Source of the DNA: Macrostomum lignano
Taxonomy: Eukaryota
Direction: 5' to 3'
Assembly (NCBI GenBank): GCA_002269645.1
Contig: NIVC01003898.1
Coordinates: 1 to 64,000 of the forward strand
Length of the DNA stretch: 64,000 nucleotides
Shown: positions 1-55,135 of the stretch, piece by piece
Layout: each line of letters starts with the position of its first letter
Numbering within the stretch: position 1 is the stretch's first letter
The notes under the pieces: generated by a model
The model's database searches: none
What the model was told of the DNA's origin: nothing
Seen by the model: the letters and a program-made list of their open reading frames with translations, nothing else
Program-made: the position numbers and the translations under genes

Positions 1-3000
1 CTTAAGCGGTGGTTCCTCATACACTGCTCGGGCCTTGTATGCTGCCTCAGAAGAGTTCAGGCTGAGAGGCAGACGTGCAGCCCATAAGGTATCCATCCTA
101 GTTACTGACGGCAGAAACAGTGGCAAAATGTTGATTAAGCCGGCAGTGAAGAGACTAAAACGCTATGCTGATACTTCCATCGTTGTTGGCATAGGACGCC
201 ACGTGAGCGAGAACGAAATGCGTCTAATTGCATCCGATTACGCCTCAGACGAAATCAGGATATCGAACTTTAGACAGCTAGCTGGAATTGTTGACAAGGT
301 AGTGAGAAAAATCTGTCCTAAGGAGGCAAGCCAGTCAGACCCAAGCCCGGACCAAAACCCGGACCCAAGCCTGGCCCACGACCAGGACCAAAACCAGGAC
401 CGACGCCAGTACCAGGACCCAAACCGGGACCGAAACCAGGACCAAAGCCGGGACCAAAGCCAGGACCAAAGCCGGGACCAAAGCCGGGACCATCAAAATG
501 GCATTGATCTTTACTTCGTTGTTGACTCAAGCAGTTCTGTAACTTCAGATGAGTTCAACTTGATCAAGCAATACATTAAGTCATATGTCAACTCTATCGT
601 AGTCTCGCCAGAAGACACTAGAGTCAGTATTATTCAATACTGGGATCAAGTAACAACGACAGTCGACATCGAAGAATACAGAACCGTGAATGATCTTATC
701 CCTGCGATTGAGAACTTGAAGTATTTCAACGGTCAAAGATCCGTTCTTGGCGATGCGCTAATCCCACATCCAAAATGATTGCAAGGAATGAGCGAAACGT
801 ACCAAAGGTTGTTATTGTTATCGCTGGAACACCGCCAACAAACGGGGAAGCAATCAAAGACGCTGCGCCGAAGCTTATCTACTACGCTGATAAGGTTATT
901 GCTATTGGCGTCAAGAACCACATGCCCAAGACTGAATTGCTGCTGATTTCTACTACCGTGGAGGACACTATCATTATTGAAGAGTACTCGAAACTGCACG
1001 ACACCATCCCTGTTATTATCGAGAAGACCAAGATCAGCGAGCGAAAGAAGCGACCTGCTCCTGGTGGAACTGGTCAAGACATCGTGTTCATTGTGGATAG
1101 CAGTGACTCAATTGGCCAGACCAATTGGAATGTGTACATCAAGGGCCTGCTTAAAGTAATCACTGAGTACGTTGTTGTCTCACCATCAGACACTAGGTTC
1201 GCACTTATCCAGTTCTCGAAGCCAGCACAGGTTGTATTCGGCTTCAAAGACTACACTGACGGAGAAAGTCTTCGAAGGGCTATCAATAAGCTGAAGCCAT
1301 ACCATAGAAGCACCTACCCGTCAATCGGAAACGCACTGAAAGTTGCGGTTGACTATGTCAAGACAAAGAAGCGTTCCGGTGTGCCAACTTCAGCCATTAT
1401 TATCACTGCTAGCACTTCCTCGCCAGAGTTGGGAAGCCGATTGAAGAGGTCATCACAGAAGTCCAAGAGGTGTTCGACTACATTATTCCGGTGGCCATCC
1501 GTAACCGAGTGGACTTGCCCGACCTAGAGAAGCTTGCCAAGCCGGATTCGTCGATGATTATCACCACAGAGGAGCTGGATGAATTGATTCCGCTATCTAA
1601 GCGAATCATTTCTCTTACGACAGTTCGGCTAAGGCAGAGGCCACTTGTTTGCAGAAAACGAAGTCGCGGTGACTTCATCTTTGTCATTGGAGCCGGCTCT
1701 GAAACTGTTAAGCATCGATACTTTGAAGAAATCAAGAGCTTTATTAAAGGTTTCTCATCTGAATACGAGATCGATGAGGGTGCATCCAGAGGTGGAGTCT
1801 TCATTCTGGGATCAAGCTCTCAGAAGGAAATTGGATTGAACATGTTTAGAAGCGACATAGACTTTAGGGCAAGCATCAATAGACTATCTGCTCCGAGCTC
1901 CAGCACAGTGCACTTCCGATCTGGAATGGAAAAAGTTGTGCGCTATGCCAGACGAAGCCGAACAAAAAAGAGACCAGCTACATTGATTTACATTTCGGAT
2001 GGCAGTGAAGTAACAAAGAATGTTTACTCTGTGGCTCCTAAGCTCGCGTCTTCAATCCGAAAGACAATTGTTGTTGGTCTTAAACCAACAATAAAGAGAA
2101 GAGCGCTTCTAAGAACAATGGTCACGGATGTTCGTAATGATTTTGTTAATGTACGTAGAATCCGGGATCTTAGACGAGTCGCGAAAACAATCTCTGGAAT
2201 GACTTGCACTAGAACTAAGAAAGCAGCTAAAGTTAAGAAAACAGAGCCAGGTGTTAAGCGCATCGTTATGAAAGAAAGTAAGCGCTCAGTCACCAAAAAC
2301 GGCTCTAAAAGGCAAAAGACAAAGACCACCAAACGAAAAACTGTCGCAAAGAAGCAGACAAAGAGACAGCGAAAGACGACAGTAAAAATCGAGGGCCAGG
2401 GAGGCAAAAATCGAAAGCGTATTTCCAAGAAGATTATTAAAAAGAATCGAAGAAAGATGAAAAAGAAGATGTCAGTTATCTACGGAACAACAATAATTAG
2501 GGGTTCGCCACGCAGATACATCAAGAAAATTAAATTCGGCAAACGATGGTTTAAGACTCGGGTGATTCGCGTCCTCAAAGGACATGGAAAGAGACGTCGA
2601 GCTAGACGATATCTGCAGATCAGATACAGGAAAAAATGGATTCGATTCAATGTCAAGCGAAAAAGAGTCCAGTTCAGACGCCGATGGTACAAAATCCGAG
2701 TTACACGTCGAAGATTTTTTATTAGAATGAGAAGAAGATGGCGTGCGCTCCAAACAGCAAGAGGAAAGGCATTTGTGACTATCAAGGGTCGAAAGCGCAT
2801 CCTGACTAACAGGAAGCGACGCAACCGAAGACAAAGGAAGCATCGACGTCATATCAAAATTAGATACACCACTAAGATCATAAAGCACAAAAAGATACGA
2901 GTTCCGTCGAACGTAAAACTCGGTTTCAAAAAGGTTCCAGTGAAAGTCGTTTCAAGAAACGGCGCAAAAAAAGGGAAAACGTATAAAACATTGATTCGCA

Positions 3001-4586
3001 TCGGTCGTCGTTGGGTGAGATTCAGTACTAGACAAAGGCGAGTAAGAATCGGAAAAGGATGGTTCCGAGTGACCTACAGAAGAAAAGGACCAGGTGTTGT
3101 GCATCGAAGAAGATGGTATAAGATCAGGGTGACAAAGAAAGGTTTCAAGATTCGCGTGGCAAGAAAATGGCGAGGTCTAGTTACTACTCGGCGAAAGCTC
3201 TATATTCAATATAGAGGAAAAATCTCCCGAGTTGGAAAGCCGCTTGTCGTTCGCTCGCTGAATGGAAAATTTAAGAAGAGAAACAAGAAAAAGCGAGTTA
3301 GCAAGAACCCAAAGCGGCGACATGGTCGATCTAGAAAAAGCAAAAGGCGCCACCGGAAAACAAATAAGAATATAAGTAGCAAAAAGCCAAAACGCCAGAG
3401 AAAAATCACAAAAATCAGTCGCCGAAGCTTCACCAAGGTGAGCGGACGACCTCCGATCCGAATCCGTTTCACCATGAGAAAGATTAATGGCAAGAAGGTT
3501 CGCGTACCCAAAACAGTCAGACTTGGCAGGAAGGTCGTTCCAGTGAAGATCCAACCACGAACCATCGTTAGACGAGGAAAGCGCATCGTCAAAAAAAGAG
3601 TCCTTGTTCGCATTCAAAAGCGCTGGCACCCGTTCAGCGTTCGTCGCAAAAAGATCAAGGTTGGAAAGACGTGGGTTACCGCATACTACAGGAAAAAAGG
3701 CTTCGGACTCAGATACAAGCGTAGATGGGTCAGAACACGCATCACAAGGAGAAAAATCAGAGTTCGTGTCACCGGAAAGTGGAGACAAGTCATCGCAAAG
3801 AGACGCAAAATTTACATCCGCGGGCGCAAAAACAAGCGATACTACACTGGACTAAAAATTCCCAAGCATCTAAGAAGACGAAGCCGAAAGATCCGCTTCC
3901 GCAAAGGAAAAGGCGTCGTGAGACGATCACGAAAGATCCGCTTCCGCAAAGGAAAAGGCGTCGTAAGACGATCACGAAAGATCCGCTTCCGCAAAGGAAA
4001 AGGCGTCGTAAGACGATCACGAAAGATCCGCTTCCGCAAAGGAAAAGGCGTCGTGAGACGATCACGAAAGATCCGCTTCCGCAAAGGAAAAGGCGTCGTG
4101 AGACGATCACGAAAGATCCGCTTCCGCAAAGGAAAAGGCGTCGTGAGACGATCACGAAAGATCCGCTTCCGCAAAGGAAAAGGCGTCGTGAGACGATCAC
4201 GAAAGATCCGCTTCCGCAAAGGAAAAGGCGTCGTGAAAAAGCTTGCTGGCAGACACTCGAAACACAAGGCCCGAGCTGCCTTCGTGAAGAGAAAATGGTA
4301 TCACACGAAAGGAGGAGTTGTCGTTGAGAACGGTCGCAAAATTGTCCTGAATCGGCGCGGAAAGATGCGCCGTAGCAGCAGTAGTCGCAAAATCATGACA
4401 AGTTCCCATAGCAGCCACTCGCACAGAATTAAATTTCACAAGTCAGGAAACGCCTCCGCTGGCTCGTCCTCCAGCAGCAGCATGACACACGAAAGCCACT
4501 CGGTTGTAATGGGCAAGCCAAAAGTGCACGACTCTGGTTGGATAACCACTCATAAAAGCTCGTCTACCTCCTCGAGCAAGACGTAA
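1..4586 (+). CDS. Multi-vWA-domain protein with very long Arg/Lys-rich C-terminal region (5'-partial, four apparent frameshifts; could be a pseudogene or assembly errors)
   Basis: Frame is open from base 2 (LSGGSSYTARALYAASEEF...KVSILVTDG = vWA C-half). Further vWA starts are IDLYFVVDSSSS (~500), DIVFIVDSSDS (~1078) and a degenerate DFIFVIGAGSE (~1670). Frame changes are needed at ~320, ~499, ~763 and ~1420. ORF 1470-4586 is uninterrupted. Basic region runs ~2208-4380, then a Ser/His-rich tail, stop at 4586 and AATAAA at 4647. Confidence 0.8.
322..498 (+). repeat. Coding Pro-Lys-Pro-Gly (12-bp) linker repeat between vWA domains
   Basis: The frame starting at 322 reads GGKPVRPKPGPKPGPKPGPRPGPKPGPTPVPGPKPG..., with variation mostly at third codon positions (cca/ccc/ccg/cct, aaa/aag, gga/ggc). 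Confidence 0.7.
3875..4235 (+). repeat. 45-bp coding tandem repeat, 8 copies (RRSRKIRFRKGKGVV)
   Basis: Near-identical units cgtgagacgatcacgaaagatccgcttccgcaaaggaaaaggcgt, in frame within ORF 1470-4586. Confidence 0.95.
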
Positions 4587-11695: not shown

Positions 11696-11697
<2 letters not shown>

Positions 11698-11749
<52 letters not shown>

Positions 11750-11800
11750 CTAAGACAGACAGACAGACAGACACTAAGACAGACAGACAGACAGACACTA

Positions 11801-11856
<56 letters not shown>

Positions 11857-11892
11857 TGACATATAGACAGACAGACAGACAGACAGACAGAT

Positions 11893-11929
<37 letters not shown>

Positions 11930-12105
11930 AACAGACAGACTGACATATAGACAGACAGACAGACAAACAGACACACAGACACTAAGACAGACAAACAGAC
12001 ACAAAGACACTAAGACAGACAAACAGACACTAAGACACTAAGACACTAAGACAGACAAACAGACACTAAGACACTAAGACACTAAGACAGACAAACAGAC
12101 AGAGA
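11698..12105. repeat. (CAGA)n microsatellite with cactaaga interruptions
   Basis: Directly visible. Confidence 0.95.
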
Positions 12106-12523
12106 CACAGGCGCATACTAAGCAATTTGGGATTCACAGTGTGAGCAGTAATCTCACACCGTGAATAATTAAGAAAACAGCGCATTAAGCAAGCAAGGGA
12201 ACTCAGAGCAGCTCAGAGCTCACATCGAAGTCGGGTTTGATCCCCAATCCAGCTTCCAATTACTTTTTCACTGCAGTTTAAACGCGCCTCCGTGATTTGG
12301 AAGGCAAATTATCTATTCGAGCTACAACAGGATTGGGTAATAAAAGTACAACCCAGGAGCTCAACGGGAAGCACTGCCCTGTCCAGTTGCAGTTGAGACG
12401 CGAGCGCGCGCAGATAAAAAGCAAATGCGTGTCCCGGATCGTGGTGGAGTAAACATATGTTTTTGCGGCAAGTAAAATTCTATGGGAAGCTCATATTTAC
12501 GATTGAAAACCGTTGGAACTCAC

Positions 12524-12613: not shown

Positions 12614-12849
12614 CTGTCAATTGTCCGGTAAACAGAAACTTCAGGGGCCAATGAACGGTTGATTTGCCTTTTTTAGATTGAATCGGCTTAGATATGTGCA
12701 ATGCCTGCGATTAGAATTAAGTACGTAGACAGAATCCACAAATACCACTTCGATTGCTACAGATATCAACTTCAATCCTTGGATAAAAATGAGAATAATA
12801 TCGTTTAATATCAATTGAAGACCTCTAGACATCGACTTAAATCCCCAAG

Positions 12850-14478
12850 ATTCGAACTCAAACCCCTAGATACCAACTCAACTCCCGATGATACCATTTA
12901 AAATTTCCCCAGATACCAACTCAAATTCCATGGGTACCAACCCAAATCCCATAGATACTAACTCAAATCCCATAGACACCAGCTCAAATTCAATAGATAC
13001 CAGCTCAAATTCAATAGATACCAACTCAAATCCAATAGATACCAACTCAAATCCCATAGATCCCAACTTAAATCCCATAGATACCAACTCAAGTGCCCTA
13101 GATACCAGCTCAAATCCAATAGATACAAACTCAAATCCAATAGATACCAACTCAAATCCCATAGATACCAACTCAAATCCCATAGATCCCAACTTAAATC
13201 CCATAGATACCAACTCAAGTGCCCTAGATACCAGCTCAAATCCAATAGATACAAACTCAAATCCAATAGATACCAACTCAAATCCCCTCGATACCAACTC
13301 AAATCCCCTCGATACCAACTCAAATCCCCTCGATACCAACTCAAATCCCCTGAATACCAACTCAAATCCCCTCGATACCAACTCAAATCCCCTCGATACC
13401 AACTCAAATCCCCTCGATACCAACTCAAATCCCCTCGATACCAACTCAAATCCCCTGAATACCAACTCAAATCCCCTCGATACCAACTCAAATCCCCTCG
13501 ATACCAACTCAAATCCCCTGAATACCAACTCAAATCCCCTGGATACCAACTCAAATCCCCTCGATACCAACTCAAATCCCCTGGATACCAACTCAAATCC
13601 CCTCGATACCAACTCAAATCCCCTGGATACCAACTCAAATCCCCTCGATACCAACTCAAATCCCCTCGATACCAACTCAAATCCCCTGAATACCAACTCA
13701 AATCCCCTGGATACCAACTCAAATCCCCTCGATACCAACTCAAATCCCCTCGATACCAACTCAACTCCCGATGATCCCATTTAAAATTTCCCCAGATACC
13801 AACTCAAATCCCCTGAATACCAACTCAAATCCCCTCGATACCAACTCAAATCCCCTGAATACCAACTCAAATCCCCTGAATACCAACTCAAATCTCCTCG
13901 ATACCAACTCAAATCCCCTGAATACCAACTCAAATCCCCTGAATACCAACTCAAATCCCCTCGATACCAACTCAAATTCCCTGGATACCAACTCAAATCC
14001 CCTCGATACCAACTCAAATCCCCTCGATACCAACTCAAATCCCCTGAATACCAACTCAAATCCCCTGAATACCAACTCAAATCCCCTGAATACCAACTCA
14101 AATCCCCTGGATACCAACTCAAATCCCCTCGATACCAACTCAAATCCCCTCGATACCAACTCAAATCCCCTGGATACCAACTCAAATCCCCTCGATACCA
14201 ACTCAAATCCCCTGGATACCAACTCAAATCCCCTCGATACCAACTCAAATCCCCTCGATACCAACTCAAATCCCCTGGATACCAACTCAAATCCCCTCGA
14301 TACCAACTCAAATCCCCTGGATACCAACTCAAATCCCCTCGATACCAACTCAAATCCCCTGGATACCAACTCAAATCCCCTCGATACCAACTCAAATCCC
14401 CTGGATACCAACTCAAATCCCCTCGATACCAACTCAAATCCGCCGGATACCAACTCAAATCCTCTCAATACCAACTCA
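12850..14478. repeat. 21-bp minisatellite (gataccaactcaaatcccctc) in endophilin intron 3
   Basis: About 75 units in two blocks, each starting with the same non-unit header (actcccgatgat..catttaaaatttccccag at 12881 and 13764). Confidence 0.95.
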
Positions 14479-24542: not shown

Positions 24543-24785
24543 CTAGGCTTGGTGATCTCGACTGCCCGTCAGACGATGAAACATTTGTTCGTTAATTTCC
24601 TGACTTCGGTCGGGCTTTCTCAGGCTGAGGAACACGTAGCCGCCGACCATTTCGGCCAGCGTTTTGCACACGGACAGCCGGGAGGCGAAGAATGGGCTGG
24701 GGACCAAAGTCATCTCGTGCGGCGGCCGGTTGAGGGTCAGACGGAAGCTCATTACCTCCCAGTTGACGGTCCAGGAGGCGAGTTC
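24543..24785 (-). CDS. FERMT2: Kindlin exon 3 (F3 subdomain C-terminus)
   Basis: ELASWTVNWE...CKTLAEMVGGYVFLSLRKPDRSQEINEQMFHRLTG, matching kindlin KQWNVNWE...HEFIGGYIFLSTR. Acceptor cccAG. The symbol marks the kindlin family, not a specific paralogue. Confidence 0.92.
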   Translation of the reverse strand, partial: ELASWTVNWEVMSFRLTLNRPPHEMTLVPSPFFASRLSVCKTLAEMVGGYVFLSLRKPDRSQEINEQMFHRLTGSRDHQA

Positions 24786-24943
24786 CTGGGTTCGAGTTGG
24801 AAACAAATTCAATGTGTTTGCTGATGATGATTAGGGCAACAAATTGGATTTACAATAGAAATTTTTCCCGGTTACAGGTAACATAGTTAAAAGACGACAG
24901 ATAGTTTCACGTAGCTAAAGCACCTGTTCCCGGCTATTCTCAC

Positions 24944-25210
24944 CTGGTATCGCCAGGTATTGAGAATATCCCCAGTCTGCACGTCCAGCCGCATAATCCT
25001 GTTAAACGCTACGCCAAACAGGGCGTCGTGATTTTTGCGTCGCTCTTTACGAAACTCGCTAAACGTCATCGGCTTGGAGCGACTCTCCGTGTAATTAACA
25101 AGGAAATACGCCACCCCGTGCATTGGCAATCGTTGCCAGGTGCGAATGTACTCCAGCTTCGACTCGAGTAAATTTAGACTCCGTACGTTTGCGTGGCGCT
25201 CCAAAATGCC
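24944..25210 (-). CDS. FERMT2: Kindlin exon 2 (end of F2, start of F3)
   Basis: 267 nt, GILERHANV...KLEYIRTWQRLPMHGVAYF...GVAFNRIMRLDVQTGDILNTWRYQ. Flanked by ctcAG and GTgaga. Confidence 0.92.
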
Positions 25211-25326
25211 CTGAGTACGAGGATTGAGCAAGCAAAATTTGTATTTATGCACAAAGTACTTAATAATCAGATTATCAGACTACAACTTCTACAACTTCAG
25301 CAAAACAAAATATCCGAAGTATTTAC

Positions 25327-27171
25327 CTGCAACAGAGCCCGACTCTTGTGCTTCTTCAGGCAGCGCAAGGCAACGAAATCGGCCACATCAATGTTGGGCA
25401 TGCTGTCAACAGTCAGCATTGGCTGCGGCCTTGGCGCCTGCATGTCCAGTCTTGTCAGGGTCTCCTTCAGTTCGCTGTCATAGAGACTCTTGCTAGCCAA
25501 AGTTTTGCCCCGAGACGCCAGGGAGATTGCAGCAACCCACTGGGCGTACTGGTCTTTGGTCTCGCAGCGGAGCCACACCTCTTGCATTAGTCCGGACTGG
25601 GTCAGGATGAACAAGCGGATGCCAAACTTTCTGGTAGTCATGTTCAAATCCGGCACAACTTCGGCATTTTTTAAATTGAACGACTCAACAAAGGCGGCCA
25701 TTTGACTAGCTGCGGCCTGGTCCGGGTACAGGTAGAGCGTCGTATCTCGCAGGGCAAAGAAGTACCGTTTGTAGTTCTTCAGAGTGAAACGTTTGGGTTT
25801 GAAAAATTTCAGGTAGCCAGAAAGTTCGGGCACCTCGCGCACCTCTGGCTGCTTCTGTTGAAGATGCTGTTGCTCCGACTGCTGACGCGACAAGTTCCCG
25901 ATGCCATAGTGCGCGTCCGACATCAGCGACATCTCTAGATCGGCCAGTGCAGCGTCGATTTCGTCATCGGCAGCCGTGTCCTCCTCTGTGACTGTAGCCG
26001 CCGCAGCGGCAGCGGAAGCCGCAGCGCCGGAATTTGACGATGTTGCTCGTTGAGGATCGTTTGCCTGTAGATGGCCCTGCAACTGCAGAGCAGCGAGCAG
26101 CATCATTTCCTCATCGGTGCAGTCGATCTCCTCAGTGAGAAGGGACCATTTGACCTGCTCGTAGATCTGGTTGATGCGAATAGCGTCATATTTGATGTTC
26201 AAATCGTAGAATGCAAAGTATTTGAATCGCAGCAGCAGTTCCTCTTCGCAGCCAGGTCGGACGCCCTGCTCCATTAGCGACTTGGACGAGTCCAGCCACG
26301 TGACTGACAGCATTGCTCGTTCGGTGTTGCTTCTCAACCGCTGAAGACCCTTCTCAGTCAGGGCCGTCTGCAACGGCACGTGTGGACTATTGGCCAAGTA
26401 GCTCTCGTCGGCACCCTCGAAAGCCAGCGAGTTGATGGACATCGGCGACATGAGGTTGGCGGACTCTCCTAGCCGAGGACTGCCAGGCGACTTTACCAGG
26501 CTGTCCGCTCCGTTTCCGTAGGGCAAAGTGCCCGCCGTCATTGAAGGCGCCTTCGGAACCAGCGGATTAAAGGCGTCGCTTCGTCTATTGTTCGATAGGC
26601 GCTTTCGCGAGTCCATAGTGTCATTGCCGCCGTTTCTATTGATCGATCGCGATCGGCGCATGCTGCTGAACCGGCTGGACTTGGTTGTCCCGACGCTGTA
26701 CGCGTAGCCGTCGCCGCCGCCGCCGCCGCCGCCCAGACCGAAATCTGCCGTGTCAATTCGGCGCTTCAGTGAGAGCTCTTCCGGGTGCCGGATGCCCAGA
26801 TCCTTGCAGATGCTCATCACTACGCTGAATACAGTCTGGGAAAAATTGACTCTAAGCTCCTTCTCCTGGAGATCGGGAAGCTGGAGGCGCAGCCAGTTGT
26901 GCATCCGATGGAATTCCAGCTTGGCGTCGGCTTGCACACCATTCTGGTCGAGAGTCTGTCGAGTTTTCAGCAGCCAACAGTTCCTCTCGGGCCACCAGAG
27001 CCCATGGTCCGACCAATCCAGCTTAACATCGATTGCTTCGACGAGTTTCAGCATGACGCCGCCGATGTGCGTCTCGCCGGAGACGCGGATGCGCTTGACA
27101 ATTTGCAGGTCTTCGACTAGTATGCTGAGCTCCCAGCTGCCGTCAACGTAAATTCCATGGCCGAGGTCCAT
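25327..27171 (-). CDS. FERMT2: Kindlin exon 1 (F0, F1, split F2, PH domain)
   Basis: ATG at 27171 in a gccATGg context. Contains DGSWEL, GETHIGGVMLKLVE, DWSDHGLWWP, WLDSSKSLMEQGV, LLLRFKYFAFYDLN and PH motif KPKRFTLKNYKRY. Donor GTaaat. The three exons join in frame to about 784 aa. Confidence 0.95.
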
Positions 27172-27687
27172 GGCGGAGAATCTCAGGCTCAAACTGAACT
27201 AGGCTGTCGACTGTGTTGTTTATAATATCGTCTGGTGGTTTTAGCTCGCGCGCTCGTGTCTTCTAAAAGCAAATGCTTTCTTGATCAAATTAGCTCAACT
27301 ATCCGTTGCTTTCGGAGTTGCAGAGTCCATAAGTAAATTTATTGATTCGTAAAATATTATAATAGATGCTTTTGCTAATAACTATTTTTTCGTCTCTCAA
27401 CGTAAACGCACTAAGCGCTGTCGATTGTATTTCCGTGCAGGAGTAAGTGAACGGCTTTTCCGCTTAGAGCAAAGCAGTACAACTCGCGATAGAAATGTAT
27501 GCTGGCAAACGGACCCTGGCACTAATACTACATATAAAGCCAAAGAAGAGCTCTCTTTTTTGTTTCTGCTCTTGAGTTCGTTTCCGTTCTACTCTTATCA
27601 GGCAAAGCCAGGCGTGCTTGAGCGGCCGCGAAGGGAGGGGGTTAGTGTTATTACAGCTCTCTCTCTCTCTCTCTCTTTGGTTTAGTC

Positions 27688-29235: not shown

Positions 29236-30165
29236 TTCCTACTCCCTGACATTCAGTGGGGTTGCTACTCCCTGACATTCGGTGGGTCAGTGGATTGCTA
29301 CTCCCTGACATTCAGTGGGGTTGCTACTCCCTGACATTCAGTGGGGTTGCTACTCCTTGATATTCAGTGGGGTTGCTACTCCCTGACATTCAGTGGGGTT
29401 GCTACTCCCTGATATTCAGTGGGTCAGTGGATTGCTACTCCCTGACATTCAGTGGGGTTGCTACTCCTTGATATTCAGTGGGGTTGCTACTCCCTGACAT
29501 TCAGTGGGGTTGCTACTCCCTGATATTCAGTGGGTCAGTGGATTGCTACTCCCTGATATTCAGTGGGGTTGCTACTGCCTGACATTCAGTGGATTGCTAC
29601 TCCCTGATATTCAGTGGGGTTGCTACTGCCTGACATTCAGTGGATTGCTACTGCCTGATATTCAGTGGATTGCTACTCCCTGATATTCAGTGGGGTTGCT
29701 ACTCCCTGACATTCAGTGTGGTTGCTACTCCCTGATATTCAGTGGGGTTGCTACTCCCTGATATTCAGTGGGGTTGCTACTCCCTGATATTCAGTGGGGT
29801 TGCTACTCCCTGACATTCAGTGGGGTTGCTACTCCCTGATATTCAGTGGGGTTGCTACTCCCTGATATTCAGTGGGGTTGCTACTCCCTGACATTCAGTG
29901 AATTGCTACTCCCTGACATTCAGTGGGGTTGCTACTCCCTGACATTCAGTGGGGTTGCTACTCCCTGACATTCAGTGGGGTTGCTACTCCCTGACATTCA
30001 GTGGGGTTGCTACTCCCTGACATTCAGTGGGGTTGCTACTCCCTGACATTCAGTGGGGTTGCTACTCCCTGATATTCAGTGGGTCAGTGGATTGCTACTC
30101 CCTGATATTCAGTGGGTTGCTACTCCCTGATACTCAGTGGGGTCAGTGGATTGCTACTCCCTGAC
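29236..30165. repeat. 26-bp minisatellite (gctactccctgacattcagtggggtt)
   Basis: About 34 units with recurring gtcagtgga insertions. Confidence 0.95.
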
Positions 30166-30959: not shown

Positions 30960-31490
30960 AGCGGTAGCTCAGTGAAGGACACAGCATGGAATGGCGGTAG
31001 CTCAGTGAAGGACACAGCAGGGAATGGCGGTAGCTCAGTGAAGGACACAGCAGGGAATGGCGGTAGCTCAGTGAAGGATCAGCAGGGAATGGCGGTAGCT
31101 CAGTGAAGGACACAGCAGGGAATGGCGGTAGCTCAGTGAAGGACCAGCAGGGAATGGCGGTAGCTCAGTGAAGGACACAGCAGGGAATGGCGGTAGCTCA
31201 GTGAAGGACACAGCAGGGAATGGCGGTAGCTCAGTGAAGGATCAGCAGGGAATGGCGGTAGCTCAGTGAAGGACCAGCAGGGAATGGCGGTAGCTCAGTG
31301 AAGGACCAGCAGGGAATGGCGGTAGCTCAGTGAAGGACCAGCAGGGAATGGCGGTAGCTCAGTGAAGGACCAGCAGGGAATGGCGGTAGCTCAGTGAAGG
31401 ACACAGCAGGGAATGGTGGTAGCTCAGTGAAGGACACAGCAGGGAATAGCGGTGGACACAGTAGGGAATAGTGGTAGTGGTAGCTCAGTG
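30960..31490. repeat. 33-bp minisatellite (ggcggtagctcagtgaaggacacagcagggaat)
   Basis: About 15 units; each contains a tRNA A-box-like ggtagctcagtg. Confidence 0.92.
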
Positions 31491-31638: not shown

Positions 31639-32307
31639 TCAGTTTGTGATGACTACAGCATCCGCGTCCGAATCAATGTCTTCAATAGATTGACTCTCTG
31701 TTCTTCTATCTTTCCTTTGTTGCAGCAGGAAACTCTCTTGCCGATCGAACAACCTAGCTAGCTGCTCCTGCGTATCCAGCTGCCTGTCAGCGAGTCGCCG
31801 GATTTGCGTTGACAGATGCTGCTGCTGTTGCTGCTGCTGCTGGTGCTGATGAGCTTCTGTATGCAATTGGCTATACGCGATATCGTGAGTGCACGATTGA
31901 TGCAGCTGGTGCTGATGCTGATAAGAGTACTGCTGGTGCGTGAAACGGCGCATAGCGTAGCTCTGACAGCAGAGACATCTTAGCCAGATATCTCTCCAGC
32001 GAGCTTTCCATGACATGGCTTTATTTCTATCCACGCTCCTGCCGCTGCTGCTGCTGCCGTACCTTCCGCGGCGCTGGCAGTTGTTAATGAAGGAGCCATC
32101 TTTCGGAAGCAGTCGGATAAAGCAGAGACTAGTTAGAAGCCACAGTCCAGCCAGAAGGTTCAGCGGTGGAGGCGGCAAAGTTGGCCTCGACGCGGAGCCA
32201 GACCTTGACGCTCGATATCGTCGAAGAAGCCAAGCATCGTAGTTTGCTCCTTTCTGATTGGTTGACTCAACACCGCTTCTATGACTGTCCAACGTCAGAA
32301 CCATCGA
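31639..32307 (-). CDS. Ankyrin/TRPM-like channel exon 2 (end of S6, TRP helix, coiled coil)
   Basis: Acceptor ttttcAG|tcg atg. Contains AWLLRRY...RPTLPPPPLNLL (TRPM W..QRY...RP.LPPP), a polyQ tract and heptad-like LSTQIRRLADRQLDTQEQLARL. Confidence 0.8.
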   Translation of the reverse strand, partial: SMVLTLDSHRSGVESTNQKGANYDAWLLRRYRASRSGSASRPTLPPPPLNLLAGLWLLTSLCFIRLLPKDGSFINNCQRRGRYGSSSSGRSVDRNKAMSWKARWRDIWLRCLCCQSYAMRRFTHQQYSYQHQHQLHQSCTHDIAYSQLHTEAHQHQQQQQQQQHLSTQIRRLADRQLDTQEQLARLFDRQESFLLQQRKDRRTESQSIEDIDSDADAVVITN

Positions 32308-32495
32308 CTGAAAATTAAATTAGGAAAAGCAGATGTTAGCAAATTGTCTGCTGCTGTAATTTAAGCAATTCATTTTCTCCTACCAAAGAAAAGATCCCAG
32401 TAGGATAACATCAGAAAAGTCTGTGAATTTAAATAAATTAATATCGAGCAAAAGCTGCTCCCCTTTTAAGCGTCGACCAGTAGACACAGACTCAC

Positions 32496-35059
32496 AGTAA
32501 GAAGGACAATTGCTAGTCCGCAAGCTAGACCAAGCAGAACTGCTCCGCCAGCGGGTTCTAAACTCAGTAGATGGCCAGAAGGACGAAAGTTATTGCTCGA
32601 ATTAGCATTATCATTGATCGCTAAATCATTAGACATAGGAGTGTCTTTGAAGGTGCTGAACCACTGTAGCATTGGAGTGGCCAGCAGGGCAATGCAGACG
32701 GTTGCTGGCCATAGACATTGGCCCAGGGCCGAAGCTTCAACGCGCACGAGAGAGGGGCCTAGCAATGGAGTGGCCAAACACCAAGTCTGCGCTATCCACA
32801 GCCAAGTCACAGTCAGAGCTGTTGTAATCAGAACCGGAAAAAGGAGGCCATCGGGTTGGATCCACAGAATCAGCAGTGCCGCATAGCCAAGCAGAAGGCT
32901 AGAAAGCTGAGCCCAGCGTCCCTGATCGTTCAAGCGCATAGAGCAAATGCAGATGTAGCGAATCTTCCCAATCAGGGATTGATGGAGCCGCTGCTTTCTT
33001 GAACCGCTCCTACTCCCAAAATTTTGGGCCAGCAGCCTAGTCAACTCTTCGCAAGCAACTCCGATCAGGAAAGTTATACTGTAACACCAGAATATTGGGT
33101 GACTGCTCAATCCGGCAACACCCATCAGAGTAAGAAATAAGACATACATCAGTTGAAAACCGCACCAGAGCCAATATTGAGCTATTGGTCGAGTCAGGAT
33201 ATCAGTGAGTGACGAGATATTCTTCAAGGTCGAGGACTTCACAGCTTTAATTTTGCTTGAACGCTTTCTACCCAGTGCGGCCACCGTTGATTCCTCAATA
33301 ATAACCTCGCTACTCTCCATATCGCCACCGATCGCGGCAGTCTTGCTTGCTTTGTCTGCCTCAAACTCGTCGTTTTCAAAGCTTCCAGCTGTGCCACCGT
33401 CGTCCAATTCGATCCCGCTGTCCCCGTTCCAGTCGGCTATCGCAGCTGATCTCATCGCTGGCAAGAGTCGCAATCGAAACCCGCCAGGTACTGAAACCAT
33501 GTCCAACAGTGACAATCCGCCAATAGAGGGCCAAGGGCAGCGCAGGAAGGCGTTGCTACCAGACAGATCTGCAACGGCGCTGACCAACTCCAACGTCCAG
33601 CTTTCGCAAGCATCTGCGTCAGCCTCCGCGGAGTAATCGCACTGGCTGCTGTCTCTAAGTTTGCCCCGTGTCGGTGGTTTCGAATGAGACAGCAGGTGAG
33701 CACCGCTGCCGGAAGCGCGTCTAGATGCTCGCGACGAAGTAATCGGTAAGCCAGGCCGCGGCGTCCACTCAGGGCAGCCCACAAAGTCAGGCTGGACAGG
33801 CGAGAGAGGGACAGTTCGTCAAAACCGCACGTCAGGGCTGCCAGATGACGGGCCTTCGCGTCATCAGAGAGGTCTGCTGGGACCGATCGAGTGCTGTACA
33901 GCGCATGCAGCTTTTCTTCCGTTTCTAATCTTGGACGCAGCCGCTGCCAAAGAGGCGGACTCGAGGCCACTGCGTCAACGAGTCGATCTTGACCTCGCAA
34001 TAGTCCGTGAATAGCGACCAGCTCGGCTAGGTTGTCCAGGGTATCTGGGCAGCGAGTCAGACTCCGGATCAGAGACGGCGATGCGGATTCGAGTTGACGC
34101 GCTAGCGCCATCGGATCGGGGCGGCGACCGAACAGCAAGCGACGAAGCGTCTCAGATGTTGTCGAGAAGGATGGTGAAATTGTAGCGGAAACTGTGGCTG
34201 GGGTCAACGCTGGCGGCGTTGGGTCCTCACCAAACCTGATAAGCCTGAGGCTGGCGTGAAACTGACTAGCCCAGTCATTTTGACAGTCGTCTAATGGGTC
34301 AAGATTGTCATCGGCGTGCCTATCGTTCCGTCTGATTAAATGTCGTTGATCGGCGTCGCTACAGAGGTGACGCGCCAGGCTAAGAATAAGAGGCCCCGCG
34401 CAAGCAAGACGCGGCAGCGCCGTCGCGGTAGCATCTAATGCGGTCGCTCCGCGCCGATCCCTGGCGCCCAGCTCGGCGCGCAACTCCAACAAAAGTGCAA
34501 AAAGTGGCGCATCAGCTCGAATTGCAGCGACGTGAAGCGGACGCTCGCCTGCGCAGCCCTCCGCGTTTACCAGCGACAGATCGTGGCGCGCCAAGCAGTT
34601 AACGGCAGCAAGGCTGCCAGCCAAACAGGCTCGGTGCATCGCCGTGTCTCCGTCGGCGTCTACAGCTGCGGAATCGGCGCCGTGCAGCAGCAGTAGACGC
34701 AGGCAGCCGGTGGAGGCAGCCGACGCGGCCAAATGCAACGGCGTATCGCCCCGAGTGTTCACCGGGCCCGGGCGCGCGCCTAGAGCAAGCAGAGCGCTGG
34801 CTGCCTCGACTGCGTCTGACCTGGCGCAGTAGTGTAGGCCGGTATCGCCGAAACGGTCGCGAACCTCTGCATCGCCGCCGTGCTTGCCGACTAGGCGGAC
34901 AATGTCAGCCCGGTTGTCGGCGCACGCCTGGTGCAACAGCCGGGCTCCGGTGGCTTCGTCTACAGGCGCATTGATCGGCCGGTCGTTGGCGAACAGGGTC
35001 TCTTCCAGCTCGTTGATGACAGACAGTCGGGGCGTTCGAGGACCGGTCGAAGTTGACAT
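32496..35059 (-). CDS. Ankyrin/TRPM-like channel exon 1 (5-6 ankyrin repeats, MHR3/4-like region, S1-S6), with a -1 frameshift at ~33620-33700
   Basis: ORF 33452-35059 has GDT(P/G/A)(L/M)H ankyrin repeats and LTLWAALSGRRGL. Overlapping ORF 32466-33782 has pre-S1 and six hydrophobic segments (PIAQYW, ACEELTRL, LLGPSL). Donor LLT|GTgagt. The exon is 2564 nt, one base short of an in-frame length. Confidence 0.8.
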
Positions 35060-36477: not shown

Positions 36478-36780
<303 letters not shown>

Positions 36781-37629
36781 TGTTAATGGGCTCATCCAGA
36801 CGTTTAATTATGAGAATGCGTAAGCGCTTGCTGTTAGTAGTAACGATTGAGGTCGCCCATAACTAGGCTTATTTTCTAAAGAAGAAAAGTCTAATGCGTG
36901 CATTATATTTGAGCTTTACCTGTCTGTCAGAATCAGTTTTCTTTGTCACCTCTAAGGATCAAGCCGATTAACTTTTGAGTTGATGCAAATGTTTTGGTGC
37001 CTTCGTATTGAAGAAATGTTTTTTGAAATGTTTTTTGAAGTCTATAACAAAATCTAAACTTATAAGAGCTACTTGTTTTTATAATTGATAATCATCATTC
37101 AAATTGGTTTGCCACATAAAACTACTATACATGGCAATAACAGTAGCTGATACAACTAAAAAAAAGTATCATAGCTACATTATGCAAACGAATTCCATGC
37201 AATTGCAGCTTTTCCTGAATAAATTCTTTTATTCTATTCCGGCAATATTTGGAGCAATGGGTGGCGGGAAATGTCTTTGAACCAGCTGATGCCCAGCCGG
37301 GTTGCCAAACAGCTTGAAGATAAGCTGGTTGCATAATTTAGCAGTGAGCCTGCCACGCAGATAAAATGACATGAGGCCATTTCAAAACGAGCCTTACGGA
37401 TAACCAGTAGCTGCAGAATACAGCTGGCTCTGTTCCTGAACAAAATTAATAATATCTGGTCACTGAGTGTCTCTTCAATTATTTGGATTGATGCGTTGAG
37501 TATATGCAAAATTATTAAGTATTACACAAACAGCCAACTCAAGAAGGGCTCTTCACACGAAAATATCTGTGCACTGCAGGCCCGTTTTTGGCTGCAAAGT
37601 GCATTGGCTGTTTGGTAGATAGGCAGACG

Positions 37630-38160
<531 letters not shown>

Positions 38161-51967: not shown

Positions 51968-52860
<893 letters not shown>

Positions 52861-53399: not shown

Positions 53400-53945
53400 A
53401 ATGACAGAACAGATAGACAGATTAGAGAAAATATGCTGAAATTAGAGAATAGACATAGAGATTTGAGAATAGATTGAGAGATTAGAGAATAGGCAGAGAG
53501 ATTAGAGAATAGACAGATACATTAAAGAAAAGATAGAGAGATTAGAAAATAGATAGAGAGATAAGAGAAAAGATAGAGAGATTAGAGATTAGACAGAGAG
53601 ATTAGAGAATAGACAGAGAGATTTGAGAATAGAAAGATAGATTTGAGAATAGAAAAAGAGATTTGAGAATAGACAGAGAGATTAGAGAATAGACAGAGAG
53701 ATTTGAGAATAGACAGAGAGATTTGAGAATAGACAGAGAGATTAGAGAATAGACAGAGAGATTTGAGAATAGACAGAGAGATTAGAGAATACACAGATAG
53801 ATTAGAGAATAGAAATAGAGATTAGAGAATAGAAATAGAGATTAGAGAATAGACAGAGAGATTAGAGAATAGACAGATACATTAGAGAAAAGATAGAGAG
53901 ATTAGAGAATAGACAGAGAGATTAGAGAATAGACAGATAGATTGC
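53400..53945. repeat. 20-bp minisatellite (gattagagaatagacagaga)
   Basis: Directly visible. Confidence 0.9.
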
Positions 53946-54317: not shown

Positions 54318-55135
54318 CCTCTTACACTATGTCACTCCCTCTTACACTATGTCACTCTCTCTTACCCTATGTCACTCTCTCTTACACTATGTCACTCTCT
54401 CTTACACTATATCATTCTCCCTTACCCTATGTCACTCTCCCTTACACTATGTCACTCTTTCTTACACTATGTCACTCTCCCTTACCCTATGTCACTCTCC
54501 CTTACACTATGTCACTCTCCCTTACACTATGTCACTCTCTCTTACACTATGTCACTCTCTCTTACACTATGTCACTCTCCCTCGCACTATGTCACTCTCC
54601 CTCGCACTATGTCACTCTCCCTCGCACTATGTCACTCTCCCTCGCACTATGTCACTCTCCCTCGCACTATGTCACTCTCCCTCGCACTATGTCACTCTCC
54701 CTCGTACTATGTCACTCTCCCTCGCACTATGTCACTCTCCGTGACACTATTTCGCTCTCTCTCGCAATATTTCACTCTCTCTGTCTTACACTATGTCACT
54801 CTAACTCGCACTATGTCACTCTACCTCGCAGTATGGCATTCTCCGTCACACTATGTCACTCTACGTCTCGCACTATGCCACTCTCCGTCACACTATGTCA
54901 CTTTCCGTCCCACTATGTCACTTTCCGTCCCACTATGTCACTTTCCGTCACACTTTTTCACTCTCCGTCACACTATGCCACTCTCACTCTCCATCACACT
55001 ATGTCACTTTCCGTCACACTATGTCACTTTCCGTCACACTAGGTCACTATTTGTCACACTATGCCACTCTCCCTCACACTTTGTCACTTTCCGTCACACT
55101 ATGTCACTCCCCGTCTCACCATGTCACTGTGGCAC
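54318..55135. repeat. 20-bp minisatellite (cttacactatgtcactctcc) with gradual unit drift
   Basis: The variant changes along the array from cttac to ctcgc to cgtca. Confidence 0.93.

What the first reader, a model, noticed from the sequence alone, without database searches (positions are those of the whole stretch)
31639..35059. TRPM-type channel body carrying N-terminal ankyrin repeats instead of the SLOG/MHR1-2 domain
Seen: the reconstructed ~1077-aa protein has 5-6 ankyrin repeats followed by segments that align in order with TRPM hallmarks. LETEEKLHALY matches LT..RLEELY; LTLWAALSGRRGLAYRLL...LPAAVLTCCLIR matches LFIWAILQNKKELSKVIW...LAALGASKLLK; FLRCPWPSIGGLSLLDMV...AIADWNG matches LLVYSCEAWGGSNCLELA...LSKQWYG. 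Then come S1-S6, W..RRY..RP.LPPP and a C-terminal coiled coil, with no Nudix or kinase domain. Known: ankyrin repeats typify TRPA, TRPN, TRPC and TRPV, whereas canonical TRPM lacks them and begins with MHR1-4. Inference: a domain-shuffled, possibly undescribed TRP architecture. It is nearly intronless, which could mean retrogene origin. Ankyrin-bearing members of TRPM/TRPS clades may already be reported, so this needs checking.
Basis: partly seen in the sequence, partly recalled or inferred. Interest (0 to 1): 0.8.

Follow-up and report, generated by a model that had tools for sequence, protein, structure and literature searches.

The report
Orphan ankyrin-bearing TRP-like channel gene
An unannotated but evolutionarily constrained gene of the flatworm Macrostomum lignano encodes one protein with ankyrin repeats followed by an extremely divergent TRP-channel-like body; the body leans weakly towards the melastatin (TRPM) family, a combination not described for that family.

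Summary
On the minus strand, 35059..31639, there is a two-exon gene with one 188-nt GT-AG intron. It encodes about 1078 aa: 5-6 ankyrin repeats, a helical linker of about 325 aa, six hydrophobic segments, a TRP domain (WLLRRY...RPTLPPPPLNLL) and a long C-terminal helix.

The window is Macrostomum lignano contig NIVC01003898.1. The gene is unannotated there and in two homeologous contigs. The frameshift is a 1-nt deletion in a G run. One homeolog carries an intact 1079-aa reading frame, with ankyrin repeats and S1-S6 in a single 868-aa ORF. dN/dS among the copies is 0.17-0.24 (p 7e-5 to 9e-11), so this is a real, constrained gene.

Outside the ankyrin repeats it has no detectable relative in billions of proteins, Pfam or the PDB.

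Home-made family profiles give a weak, consistent TRPM-leaning signal: 7 bits, 0 of 500 local shuffles, three collinear blocks. TRPC, TRPN and TRPA1 comparisons give nothing. However, TRPM, TRPC and TRPN profiles score each other at 31-141 bits, so this protein lies far outside every family. The pore loop is short and lacks the canonical filter.

"TRPM body with ankyrin repeats" is partly supported. TRPM membership and retrogene origin are not.

The parts
31639..35059 (-). Whole coding region of the TRP-like gene, from ATG at 35059 to the stop codon at 31639-31641
   Evidence: start context GCCACCATCATG with an in-frame upstream stop
32496..35059 (-). Exon 1: N-terminus, ankyrin repeats, linker and S1 to mid-S6. 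It is interrupted in this copy by a 1-nt deletion.
   Evidence: uninterrupted 868-aa ORF in homeolog L001 2524..5130
34346..34957 (-). Ankyrin repeats 1-6 (residues 35-238; five clear, the sixth degenerate)
   Evidence: Pfam Ank_2 1.3e-36, Ank_5, Ank_4, Ank_3, Ank; coordinates
33381..34345 (-). Helical linker of about 325 aa between the ankyrin repeats and the membrane domain, about 14 predicted helices. Its length is comparable to MHR3+MHR4 rather than to a TRPC linker.
   Evidence: DSSP of the AF2 model (low confidence); TRPM profile 6.8 bits on residues 231-484, 0 of 500 shuffles. The length comparison is from known TRP structures (my knowledge).
33648..33832 (-). MHR4-like block LSRLSSLTFWAALSGRRSLAYRLL...LPAAVLTCCLIR, the best family-specific match
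   Evidence: TRPM profile domain score 5.1 bits, per-comparison E 3e-4; hhalign P 0.06
33666..33667 (-). Frameshift site. The G run is GGGG here, GGGGG in L002 and GGTGG in L001, so one base is missing in the window copy.
33423..33467 (-). LLPAMRSAAIADWNG, the counterpart of the (A/S)(H/Q)P.vQ..L...W.G motif that closes the linker in TRPM, TRPC and TRPN alike
   Evidence: multiple alignment; hhalign with TRPN P 0.1
33204..33380 (-). Acidic, probably disordered insert before pre-S1. TRPM4 and TRPM7 have an insert at the same place.
32781..33194 (-). Pre-S1 (TRPIAQYW) and S1-S4. S2 ends in ACEELTR (TRPM: CEE(L/M)RQ). S4 has no charged residue.
   Evidence: hydropathy; TRPM profile block; coordinates
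32658..32765 (-). S4-S5 linker with the LGP motif (LLGPSLVRVEASALG) and S5
   Evidence: alignment; G and P are invariant across the TRPM/TRPC/TRPN alignment
32550..32657 (-). Short pore loop of 35-36 aa (STFKDTPMSNDLAINDNANSSNNFRPSGHLLSLEPA). It has no FGQ- or LFW-type pore-helix/filter motif.
   Evidence: alignment
32308..32495 (-). Intron (GTGAGT...TTTCAG, phase 0) inside S6, present in all three copies
31639..32307 (-). Exon 2: end of S6, TRP domain, re-entrant helix, rib-like helix, His/Gln-rich tract, coiled coil, acidic tail, stop codon
32152..32232 (-). TRP domain: box 1 WLLRRY and box 2 RPTLPPPPLNLL
   Evidence: TRPM4 S6-TRP alignment 5.9 bits, E 1.6e-4 for a single comparison
32107..32157 (-). 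Hydrophobic helix after the TRP domain (LLAGLWLLTSLCFIRLL), in the position of the re-entrant helix of TRPM and TRPC
   Evidence: hydropathy; position by analogy (inference)
31702..31815 (-). Putative coiled coil LSTQIRRLADRQLDTQEQLARLFDRQESFLLQQRKDRR
   Evidence: Part of the long helix 955-1055, which has the highest pLDDT of the model at 56-68. The heptad pattern was judged by eye (inference).

Best explanation
This is a genuine, selectively maintained protein-coding gene of Macrostomum lignano. It is present in three homeologous copies and missing from the annotation. It encodes one polypeptide of about 1079 aa with 5-6 ankyrin repeats, a long helical linker, a six-helix membrane domain, a TRP domain and a C-terminal coiled coil. 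It is an extremely divergent member of the group-1 TRP superfamily (TRPM/TRPS/TRPC/TRPN). Its residual residue-level similarity is closest to TRPM in three places: an MHR4-type block, the pre-S1/S1/S2 region and the S6-TRP domain.

Inferred mechanism: four subunits assemble through the membrane domain and the C-terminal coiled coil. The ankyrin and linker layers form a cytoplasmic ring that receives a signal such as a protein partner or force. The conserved S4-S5 LGP elbow and the TRP helix tryptophan couple that ring to S6. The pore loop is short and non-canonical (F-K-D-T-P where TRPM has F-G-Q-V/I-P). The protein is therefore either a channel with unusual permeation or a non-conducting or modulatory subunit.

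Shown: the gene structure, the intact ORF in one copy, purifying selection, the ankyrin repeats, the TRP-domain signature and the absence of close relatives. Inferred: TRPM affinity (weak statistics), tetramer formation, gating coupling and conduction.
For: Species and locus: my 3-exon reconstruction of the neighbouring kindlin gene is identical to M. lignano PAA49365.1. The window equals NIVC01003898.1.

Intact copy: L001 has an 868-aa exon-1 ORF plus exon 2, giving 1079 aa. Both frameshifts (window and L002) are single-G losses in G runs.

Selection: dN/dS is 0.18, 0.24 and 0.17. Synonymous/nonsynonymous counts are 29/16, 19/14 and 38/20. Binomial p values are 2.7e-8, 6.7e-5 and 9.2e-11. Synonymous changes exceed or roughly equal nonsynonymous ones in every domain, against a 3:1 neutral expectation, and the only other coding indels are in frame.

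TRP identity: collinear motifs appear in the alignment. A generic TRPM/C/N profile gives p about 0.01. The TRP-domain pattern is unique in the window and absent from 78 decoys.

TRPM leaning: the TRPM profile scores 7.0 bits with 0 of 500 shuffles reaching it. The TRPC profile reports nothing, and the TRPN profile scores -2.4 with 149 of 500 shuffles at or above it. The protein ranks first of 79 against the TRPM profile. With MAFFT --add, 0 of 120 shuffles reach the real score for TRPM, against 14/120 for TRPC and 24/120 for TRPN. Single-sequence phmmer gives TRPM4 0/300, TRPM7 1/300 and TRPM2 5/300; the TRPC, TRPN and TRPA1 references show nothing, while TRPV1 is borderline (2/300 at -0.3 bits).
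Against: No standard method recognises the non-ankyrin part: Pfam, PDB phmmer, a word-seeded search of 5.8 billion proteins and an exhaustive phmmer search of 1.84 billion representatives with the membrane region. The TRPM score of 7 bits is tiny beside cross-family scores of 31-141 bits. TRPM8 alone gives no signal, and global hhalign shows no excess. My family profiles were shallow and uneven: 7 TRPM, 8 TRPC and 3 TRPN sequences, all but one of them vertebrate. No structure-based confirmation was possible, because the AF2 models have pLDDT 42 and 49 and Foldseek found nothing. There is no annotation in any of the three contigs, so expression is unproven. Two of the three copies carry frameshifts as assembled. 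The pore helix/filter, the S4 charges and most residues of the TRPM Ca2+ site are not conserved.
Confidence: 0.6

Rival explanations
1. It is a divergent descendant of an ankyrin-bearing group-1 TRP lineage (TRPC- or TRPN-like, or a family of its own) that never had a SLOG domain. The TRPM-like matches would then be motifs shared by the superfamily, plus long-branch noise.
For: Ankyrin repeats x4-6 + helical linker + TRP boxes 1 and 2 + re-entrant helix + rib-like helix + coiled coil is the TRPC plan (my knowledge of TRPC structures). The linker-closing W.G motif, LGP and P.P(F/L)N(L/I) are shared by TRPM, TRPC and TRPN. The best hhalign hit to TRPN (P 0.1) is as good as the individual TRPM hits. 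The protein lies outside all three families.
Against: TRPC and TRPN profiles and single sequences give no excess over shuffles, while TRPM does in four different tests. Box 1 ends in R-Y and box 2 starts R-P, as in TRPM. The linker length matches MHR3+4 rather than a TRPC or TRPN linker.
Confidence: 0.25
2. It is a decaying pseudogene or a non-functional relic of a TRP gene.
For: Frameshifts are present in the window copy and in L002. There is no annotation although the M. lignano proteome is in the database. The pore is degenerate. The gene is flanked by satellite arrays.
Against: An intact 1079-aa frame exists in L001. dN/dS is 0.17-0.24 with p down to 9e-11. Both frameshifts are single-base losses in G homopolymers, the classic long-read consensus error (the error interpretation is an inference). 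The other coding indels are multiples of three. Splice sites are conserved.
Confidence: 0.08
3. It is not a TRP homologue at all, but an unrelated ankyrin-repeat membrane protein whose TRP-like motifs are coincidental.
For: No significant hit by any standard sequence or structure search.
Against: Six hydrophobic segments are followed at the right distance by a two-part TRP-domain signature that is unique in 128,000 translated residues and absent from decoys. The blocks are collinear. Empirical p values are 0.002-0.01.
Confidence: 0.06
4. The ankyrin ORF and the membrane ORF are two separate genes.
For: In the window they are in different frames.
Against: They form one continuous ORF across the junction in L001 (868 aa) and in L002. 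Constraint is similar on both halves.
Confidence: 0.01

Closest known systems
TRPM (melastatin) channels, e.g. human TRPM4, TRPM2, TRPM7; M. lignano TRPM_PZQ
   Same: Weak collinear similarity in an MHR4-type block, pre-S1/S1/S2 (P-I/V..F/W; CEEL), the S4-S5 LGP motif and the S6-TRP domain (W..RRY, RP.LPPP). A long helical linker of MHR3+4 size. A hydrophobic helix after the TRP domain, and a C-terminal coiled coil.
   Different: No SLOG/MHR1-2, with ankyrin repeats instead. No Nudix or kinase domain. No FGQ filter or pore helix. No S4 arginine or histidine. The Ca2+-site residues are mostly replaced. The family profile scores it 7 bits, against about 900-1100 bits for members and 67-128 bits for TRPC and TRPN.
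TRPC (canonical) channels, e.g. TRPC5, TRPC6
   Same: Overall architecture: a few N-terminal ankyrin repeats, a helical linker ending in the W.G motif, LGP, TRP box 1 and a proline-rich box 2, a re-entrant helix, and rib and pole helices.
   Different: No residue-level signal with the TRPC profile or with single TRPC sequences. No TRP_2 domain hit, no EWKFAR, no LFW pore motif. The linker is about twice as long.
TRPN (NOMPC)
   Same: Ankyrin repeats upstream of a helical linker. The linker end aligns (hhalign P 0.1). Box 2 is P.P(L/F)NL.
   Different: 5-6 rather than 29 ankyrin repeats. The TRPN profile shows no excess over shuffles. From my knowledge, TRPN lacks the C-terminal coiled coil.
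TRPS (soromelastatin, ced-11-like)
   Same: It is the sister family of TRPM with a divergent TRP box 2. It would be a natural home for aberrant TRPM-like proteins.
   Different: TRPS has SLOG and Nudix domains and no ankyrin repeats (PMC7306681). No TRPS sequence was available to me for a direct test.

Membership tests
TRPM | N-terminal SLOG / MHR1-2 domain | tested here: not met
   The N-terminus is ankyrin repeats (Pfam). There is no LSDAT/SLOG hit even at E<=10.
TRPM | MHR3-MHR4 helical region | tested here: inconclusive
   The TRPM profile (MHR3 to TRP) scores the linker 6.8 bits with 0 of 500 shuffles. The best block is at the start of MHR4. Pfam PF25508, found on TRPM hits, is not detected.
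TRPM | Recognised by family-level sequence models at member-like scores | tested here: not met
   7.0 bits, against 896-1133 bits for members and 67-128 bits for TRPC and TRPN. No PDB TRPM hit.
TRPM | Pore helix and FGQ(V/I)P-type selectivity filter | tested here: not met
   The S5-S6 loop is 35-36 aa, and F-K-D-T-P aligns to F-G-Q-V-P.
TRPM | TRP box WK(F/Y/A)QR(Y/H) followed by (R/K)P.(L/A)(P/A)PP | tested here: met
   WLLRRY-(9 aa)-RPTLPPP, met in relaxed form: W, R, Y and RP.LPPP are conserved and the spacing is one residue longer.
TRPM | C-terminal coiled coil (pole helix) | tested here: inconclusive
   A long helix at 955-1055 in a low-confidence model. The heptad pattern was judged by eye only.
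TRPM | Phylogenetic placement inside TRPM | not testable with these tools
   There are no orthologues, and about 17-21% identity over 294 alignable columns, so any tree would be dominated by long-branch artefacts.
TRPC | Four ankyrin repeats plus a linker helical domain with the TRP_2 motif | tested here: inconclusive
   Ankyrin repeats are present. There is no PF08344 hit, and the TRPC profile does not report the linker.
TRPC | EWKFAR box, LFW pore motif and family-profile recognition | tested here: not met
   Only the W and R of the box are kept, there is no LFW motif, and the TRPC profile gives no score.
TRPN | About 29 ankyrin repeats and family-profile recognition | tested here: not met
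   5-6 repeats. The TRPN profile scores -2.4 bits, with 149 of 500 shuffles at or above that.
TRPS | SLOG and Nudix domains and a TRPS-type TRP domain | tested here: not met
   No SLOG or Nudix hit. The TRPS-type TRP domain was not compared because I had no TRPS sequences.
Group-1 TRP superfamily (TRPM/S/C/N) | Six TM segments, the S4-S5 LGP elbow, and a TRP domain with boxes 1 and 2 directly after S6 | tested here: met
   a generic profile gives p about 0.01

The most novel reading that the evidence does not exclude
The gene represents a previously unrecognised TRP lineage that combines ankyrin repeats with an MHR3/4-type linker. One possibility is a surviving offshoot of the ankyrin-bearing stem that preceded SLOG acquisition in the TRPM/TRPS ancestor. 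That would speak to the ankyrin loss before the TRPM-TRPS split inferred in PMC7306681. The other possibility is a flatworm invention in which SLOG was replaced by ankyrin repeats and the pore was remodelled.
Probability: 0.15. Interest if true: 0.8.

Novelty: new variant of a known kind. Interest (0 to 1): 0.55.

Why it matters
TRPM and TRPS are described as the group-1 TRP families without ankyrin repeats. A constrained gene that joins ankyrin repeats to a TRPM-leaning body would therefore bear on how the melastatin N-terminus arose. It would also add a very divergent member to the flatworm TRP repertoire, which is of pharmacological interest because TRPM_PZQ is the praziquantel target.

The gene also shows that a transcript-based annotation can miss a 1079-aa constrained gene in all three homeologous copies. 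Its remodelled pore makes it a natural test of which parts of a TRP channel are dispensable.

The practical limit is that the family assignment rests on weak statistics and expression is unproven.

Tried and rejected
- Full-length homologue search: swamped by generic ankyrin proteins and uninformative.
- Non-ankyrin part against 5.8 billion proteins: nothing at E<=10.
- Membrane region against 1.84 billion representatives by exhaustive phmmer: nothing.
- Pfam on ORFs and sub-segments up to E=10: nothing relevant.
- PDB phmmer: nothing.
- Exact-sequence look-ups of the ORFs: not on record.
- AlphaFold2 without an alignment, on the full length and on the TM+TRP segment: pLDDT 42 and 49. Foldseek on both found no match below E 0.5. 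TRPC4 and TRPC5 appear only at E 5-8, which is meaningless.
- I did not feed AlphaFold an alignment of TRP channels, because that would be circular.
- hhalign in global mode and pairwise global alignments: uninformative.
- The last homologue search, with a mixed TRPM/TRPC/TRPN profile, returned 825 hits, of which only the best 120 were listed, all vertebrate TRPC3/6/7, TRPM8 and TRPM2. No flatworm or TRPS sequences could be obtained.
- Rfam scan of the window: no hit.
- Retrogene origin: rejected, because there is a conserved intron and the neighbours are equally intron-poor.
- Two separate genes: rejected, because the ORF is continuous in the homeologs.
- Pseudogene: considered unlikely, given dN/dS and the homopolymer context of both frameshifts.
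Full report
**What is in the sequence.**
On the minus strand, three long ORFs cover 35059..31639: 35059..33452 (535 aa), 33782..32466 (438 aa) and 32304..31639 (221 aa). The first two overlap in different frames, so a frameshift lies near 33650. The second and third are separated by a canonical phase-0 intron, with GTGAGT starting at 32495 and TTTCAG ending at 32308. The ATG at 35059 has a GCCACC-like context and an in-frame stop upstream.

Pfam finds only ankyrin repeats (Ank_2 E=1.3e-36, five stretches). By eye there are five clear repeats and a degenerate sixth, at residues 35-238. Hydropathy gives six membrane-length segments between residues about 630 and 865, and one more after the TRP-like motif. 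There is no SLOG, Nudix, kinase, Ion_trans or TRP-specific Pfam hit, even on sub-segments at E<=10.

**Where the window comes from.**
The neighbouring ORF at 25297..27192 is a kindlin. I rebuilt its three exons (27171..25327, 25210..24944, 24785..24543). The 784-aa product is identical to Macrostomum lignano PAA49365.1, which has two further homeologous copies. The window is bases 1-64000 of contig NIVC01003898.1 of GCA_002269645.1. No gene is called in the 10 kb upstream of kindlin in this contig or in the two homeologous contigs. The M. lignano proteome is in the protein database, yet neither the full protein nor its parts are found there. The gene is therefore unannotated.

**The gene is real and constrained.**
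The homeologous loci L001 (NIVC01000012.1) and L002 (NIVC01001779.1) carry the same gene upstream of kindlin.
- In L001, exon 1 is a single uninterrupted 868-aa ORF containing the ankyrin repeats, the linker and S1-S6. With exon 2 it gives an intact 1079-aa protein. The junction reads ...CLIRNHRHGGKLRDSSQCDYSAEADAD....
- The window copy lacks one G in a G run at 33666. L002 is intact there but lacks one G in another G run, at the position equivalent to 34752.
- Single-base losses in homopolymers are the typical error of long-read assemblies. I regard both as probable assembly errors, which is an inference.
- The other coding indels are a 9-nt insertion and a 3-nt deletion in L001, both in frame.

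Nei-Gojobori dN/dS between the copies is 0.18, 0.24 and 0.17, with dS of 0.024-0.049. Synonymous/nonsynonymous counts are 29/16, 19/14 and 38/20. The deficit of nonsynonymous change has binomial p values of 2.7e-8, 6.7e-5 and 9.2e-11; the three comparisons are not independent. Intron and flank divergence (1.1-3.7%) is similar to dS. Variable codons are mostly synonymous in the ankyrin, linker and membrane parts alike. This rules out a long-dead pseudogene and two separate genes.

**No close relatives.**
The full-length search returned only generic ankyrin proteins. The non-ankyrin 672 aa found nothing at E<=10 among 5.8 billion clusters. The membrane region found nothing at E<=0.001 among 1.84 billion representatives read exhaustively. 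PDB phmmer found no TRP channel at E<=10. AlphaFold2 without an alignment gave pLDDT 42 for the full length and 49 for TM+TRP, and Foldseek gave no meaningful match. M. lignano also has a canonical, well-conserved TRPM_PZQ (PMC9910428). The divergence seen here is therefore specific to this gene and not a general property of the species' TRP channels.

**Is it a TRP channel?**
I assembled reference sequences for TRPM2, TRPM4, TRPM7, TRPM8, TRPC5, TRPC6, TRPA1 and TRPV1. Each was checked against PDB chains at about 2.1-2.3 bits per residue. I added TRPN proteins and further TRPC and TRPM proteins from the database.

In a multiple alignment the M. lignano protein lines up collinearly with TRPM, TRPC and TRPN at these points:
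- the last linker helices;
- the linker-closing motif (LLPAMRSAAIADWNG, against ..P.vQ..L...W.G);
- pre-S1 (TRPIAQYW), S1 and S2 (ACEELTR);
- the S4-S5 LGP elbow and S5;
- S6 (IVLLTSMVLTL, against ILLVNLLIAM);
- TRP box 1 (WLLRRY) and box 2 (RPTLPPPPLNLL).

A generic three-family profile scores it above about 99% of local-composition-preserving shuffles. A generic TRP-domain pattern hits 114 of 123 true TRP proteins, none of 78 decoys, and only this site in all six frames of the window (the pattern was written post hoc). I put homology to group-1 TRP channels at about 0.9.

**Which family?**
- Family profiles. A TRPM profile covering MHR3 to the TRP domain scores residues 231-940 at 7.0 bits, with 0 of 500 shuffles reaching it. 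The linker alone scores 6.8 bits, also 0 of 500. The three blocks are collinear: the start of MHR4, pre-S1/S1/S2 and the TRP domain. The TRPC profile reports nothing, and the TRPN profile is within the null.
- Decoys. Against 78 unrelated real proteins, the M. lignano protein ranks first for the TRPM profile only, by a small margin of 5.8 against 3.4 bits.
- MAFFT --add. Adding the real or shuffled sequence to a fixed nine-sequence alignment gives an excess only for TRPM: 0/120, against 14/120 for TRPC and 24/120 for TRPN.
- Single-sequence phmmer. TRPM4, TRPM7 and TRPM2 give 0, 1 and 5 of 300 shuffles at or above the real score. TRPM8 and the TRPC, TRPN and TRPA1 references show nothing; TRPV1 is borderline, with 2 of 300 shuffles at a real score of -0.3 bits.
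- Best pairwise alignment. The S6-TRP domain of TRPM4 aligns at 5.9 bits, E 1.6e-4 for one comparison.

The signal is consistent but weak. The same profiles score members of the other families at 31-141 bits. Over 294 alignable columns the protein is 14-21% identical to any reference, while TRPM8, TRPC5 and TRPN share 23-28% with each other. It therefore lies outside all three families. 'TRPM-leaning' is as far as the data go.

**Points against a simple 'TRPM with a swapped N-terminus'.**
- Ankyrin repeats + helical linker + TRP boxes + re-entrant helix + rib-like helix + coiled coil is also the TRPC plan, and most of the matching motifs are shared by the whole superfamily.
- The S5-S6 loop is only 35-36 aa, with F-K-D-T-P where TRPM has F-G-Q-V/I-P.
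- S4 has no charged residue.
- The S2/S3 Ca2+-site positions are mostly replaced.

**Points in favour.**
- The linker is about 325 aa with about 14 predicted helices. That is the size of MHR3+4 and roughly twice that of a TRPC or TRPN linker (the size comparison is from my knowledge of the structures).
- Box 1 ends in R-Y and box 2 begins R-P.
- An acidic insert sits where TRPM4 and TRPM7 have one.

**Literature.**
TRPM and TRPS are stated to lack ankyrin repeats, with loss inferred before their split (PMC7306681). A 2026 survey of TRPM domain gains and losses mentions ankyrin only as the cryptic repeats inside MHR3/4, and does not cover flatworms (PMC13143021). A mollusc survey repeats that TRPM has no ankyrin repeats (PMC12980990). 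I found no report of this architecture.

**Retrogene idea.**
The gene has a conserved spliceosomal intron inside S6. The neighbouring kindlin has only three exons with short introns. Intron poverty is therefore local or genome-wide and is not a mark of retroposition.

**Verdict.**
This is a new, constrained, unannotated TRP-like gene with ankyrin repeats and a weak TRPM affinity, far outside every known family and with a remodelled pore. Its family placement and function need orthologues, transcripts and expression experiments.

Noticed in passing
window 24543-27171 (-): Kindlin (fermitin) gene with only three exons (27171..25327, 25210..24944, 24785..24543). Its product is identical to M. lignano PAA49365.1, which identified the species and the contig.
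   Followed up: yes
window 35-4586 (+): ORFs with von Willebrand factor A domains run into a 1038-aa ORF that is extremely rich in Lys and Arg. That ORF ends in about eight tandem copies of RRSRKIRFRKGKGVV. Its function is unknown, and it is unclear whether it is one gene.
   Followed up: no
window 29239-30143, 30961-31453, 36478-36783, 37630-38160: The TRP-like gene is bracketed by satellite and microsatellite arrays: a 26-mer x34, a 33-mer x15 directly 3' of the stop codon, (ATCT)n and (GATA)n. The (ATCT)n array is much longer in homeolog L001.
   Followed up: partly
window 11696-12110, 12835-14478, 51969-52858, 53441-53943, 54324-55128: Further large tandem arrays: (CAGA)n, a 21-mer x78, (TAGA)n x222, and two 20-mer arrays. 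They explain the extreme GC-skew windows and the overlapping both-strand 'ORFs' there.
   Followed up: partly
window 33666; L002 position equivalent to window 34752: Both frameshifts among the three homeologous copies are single-G losses in G homopolymers. This suggests residual long-read indel errors in assembly GCA_002269645.1, which would break gene models elsewhere too.
   Followed up: partly
L001 19184-22652, L002 20244-22634, L003 20523-22629: A BAR-domain gene lies downstream of kindlin in all three homeologous contigs. Synteny (TRP-like gene, kindlin, BAR gene) is therefore conserved among the copies.
   Followed up: no
L001 about 3250 (9-nt insertion, LKL) and about 5030 (3-nt deletion, Ser): Copy-specific in-frame indels in the linker and in the pore loop of the intact homeolog. 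The pore loop tolerates a length change.
   Followed up: no
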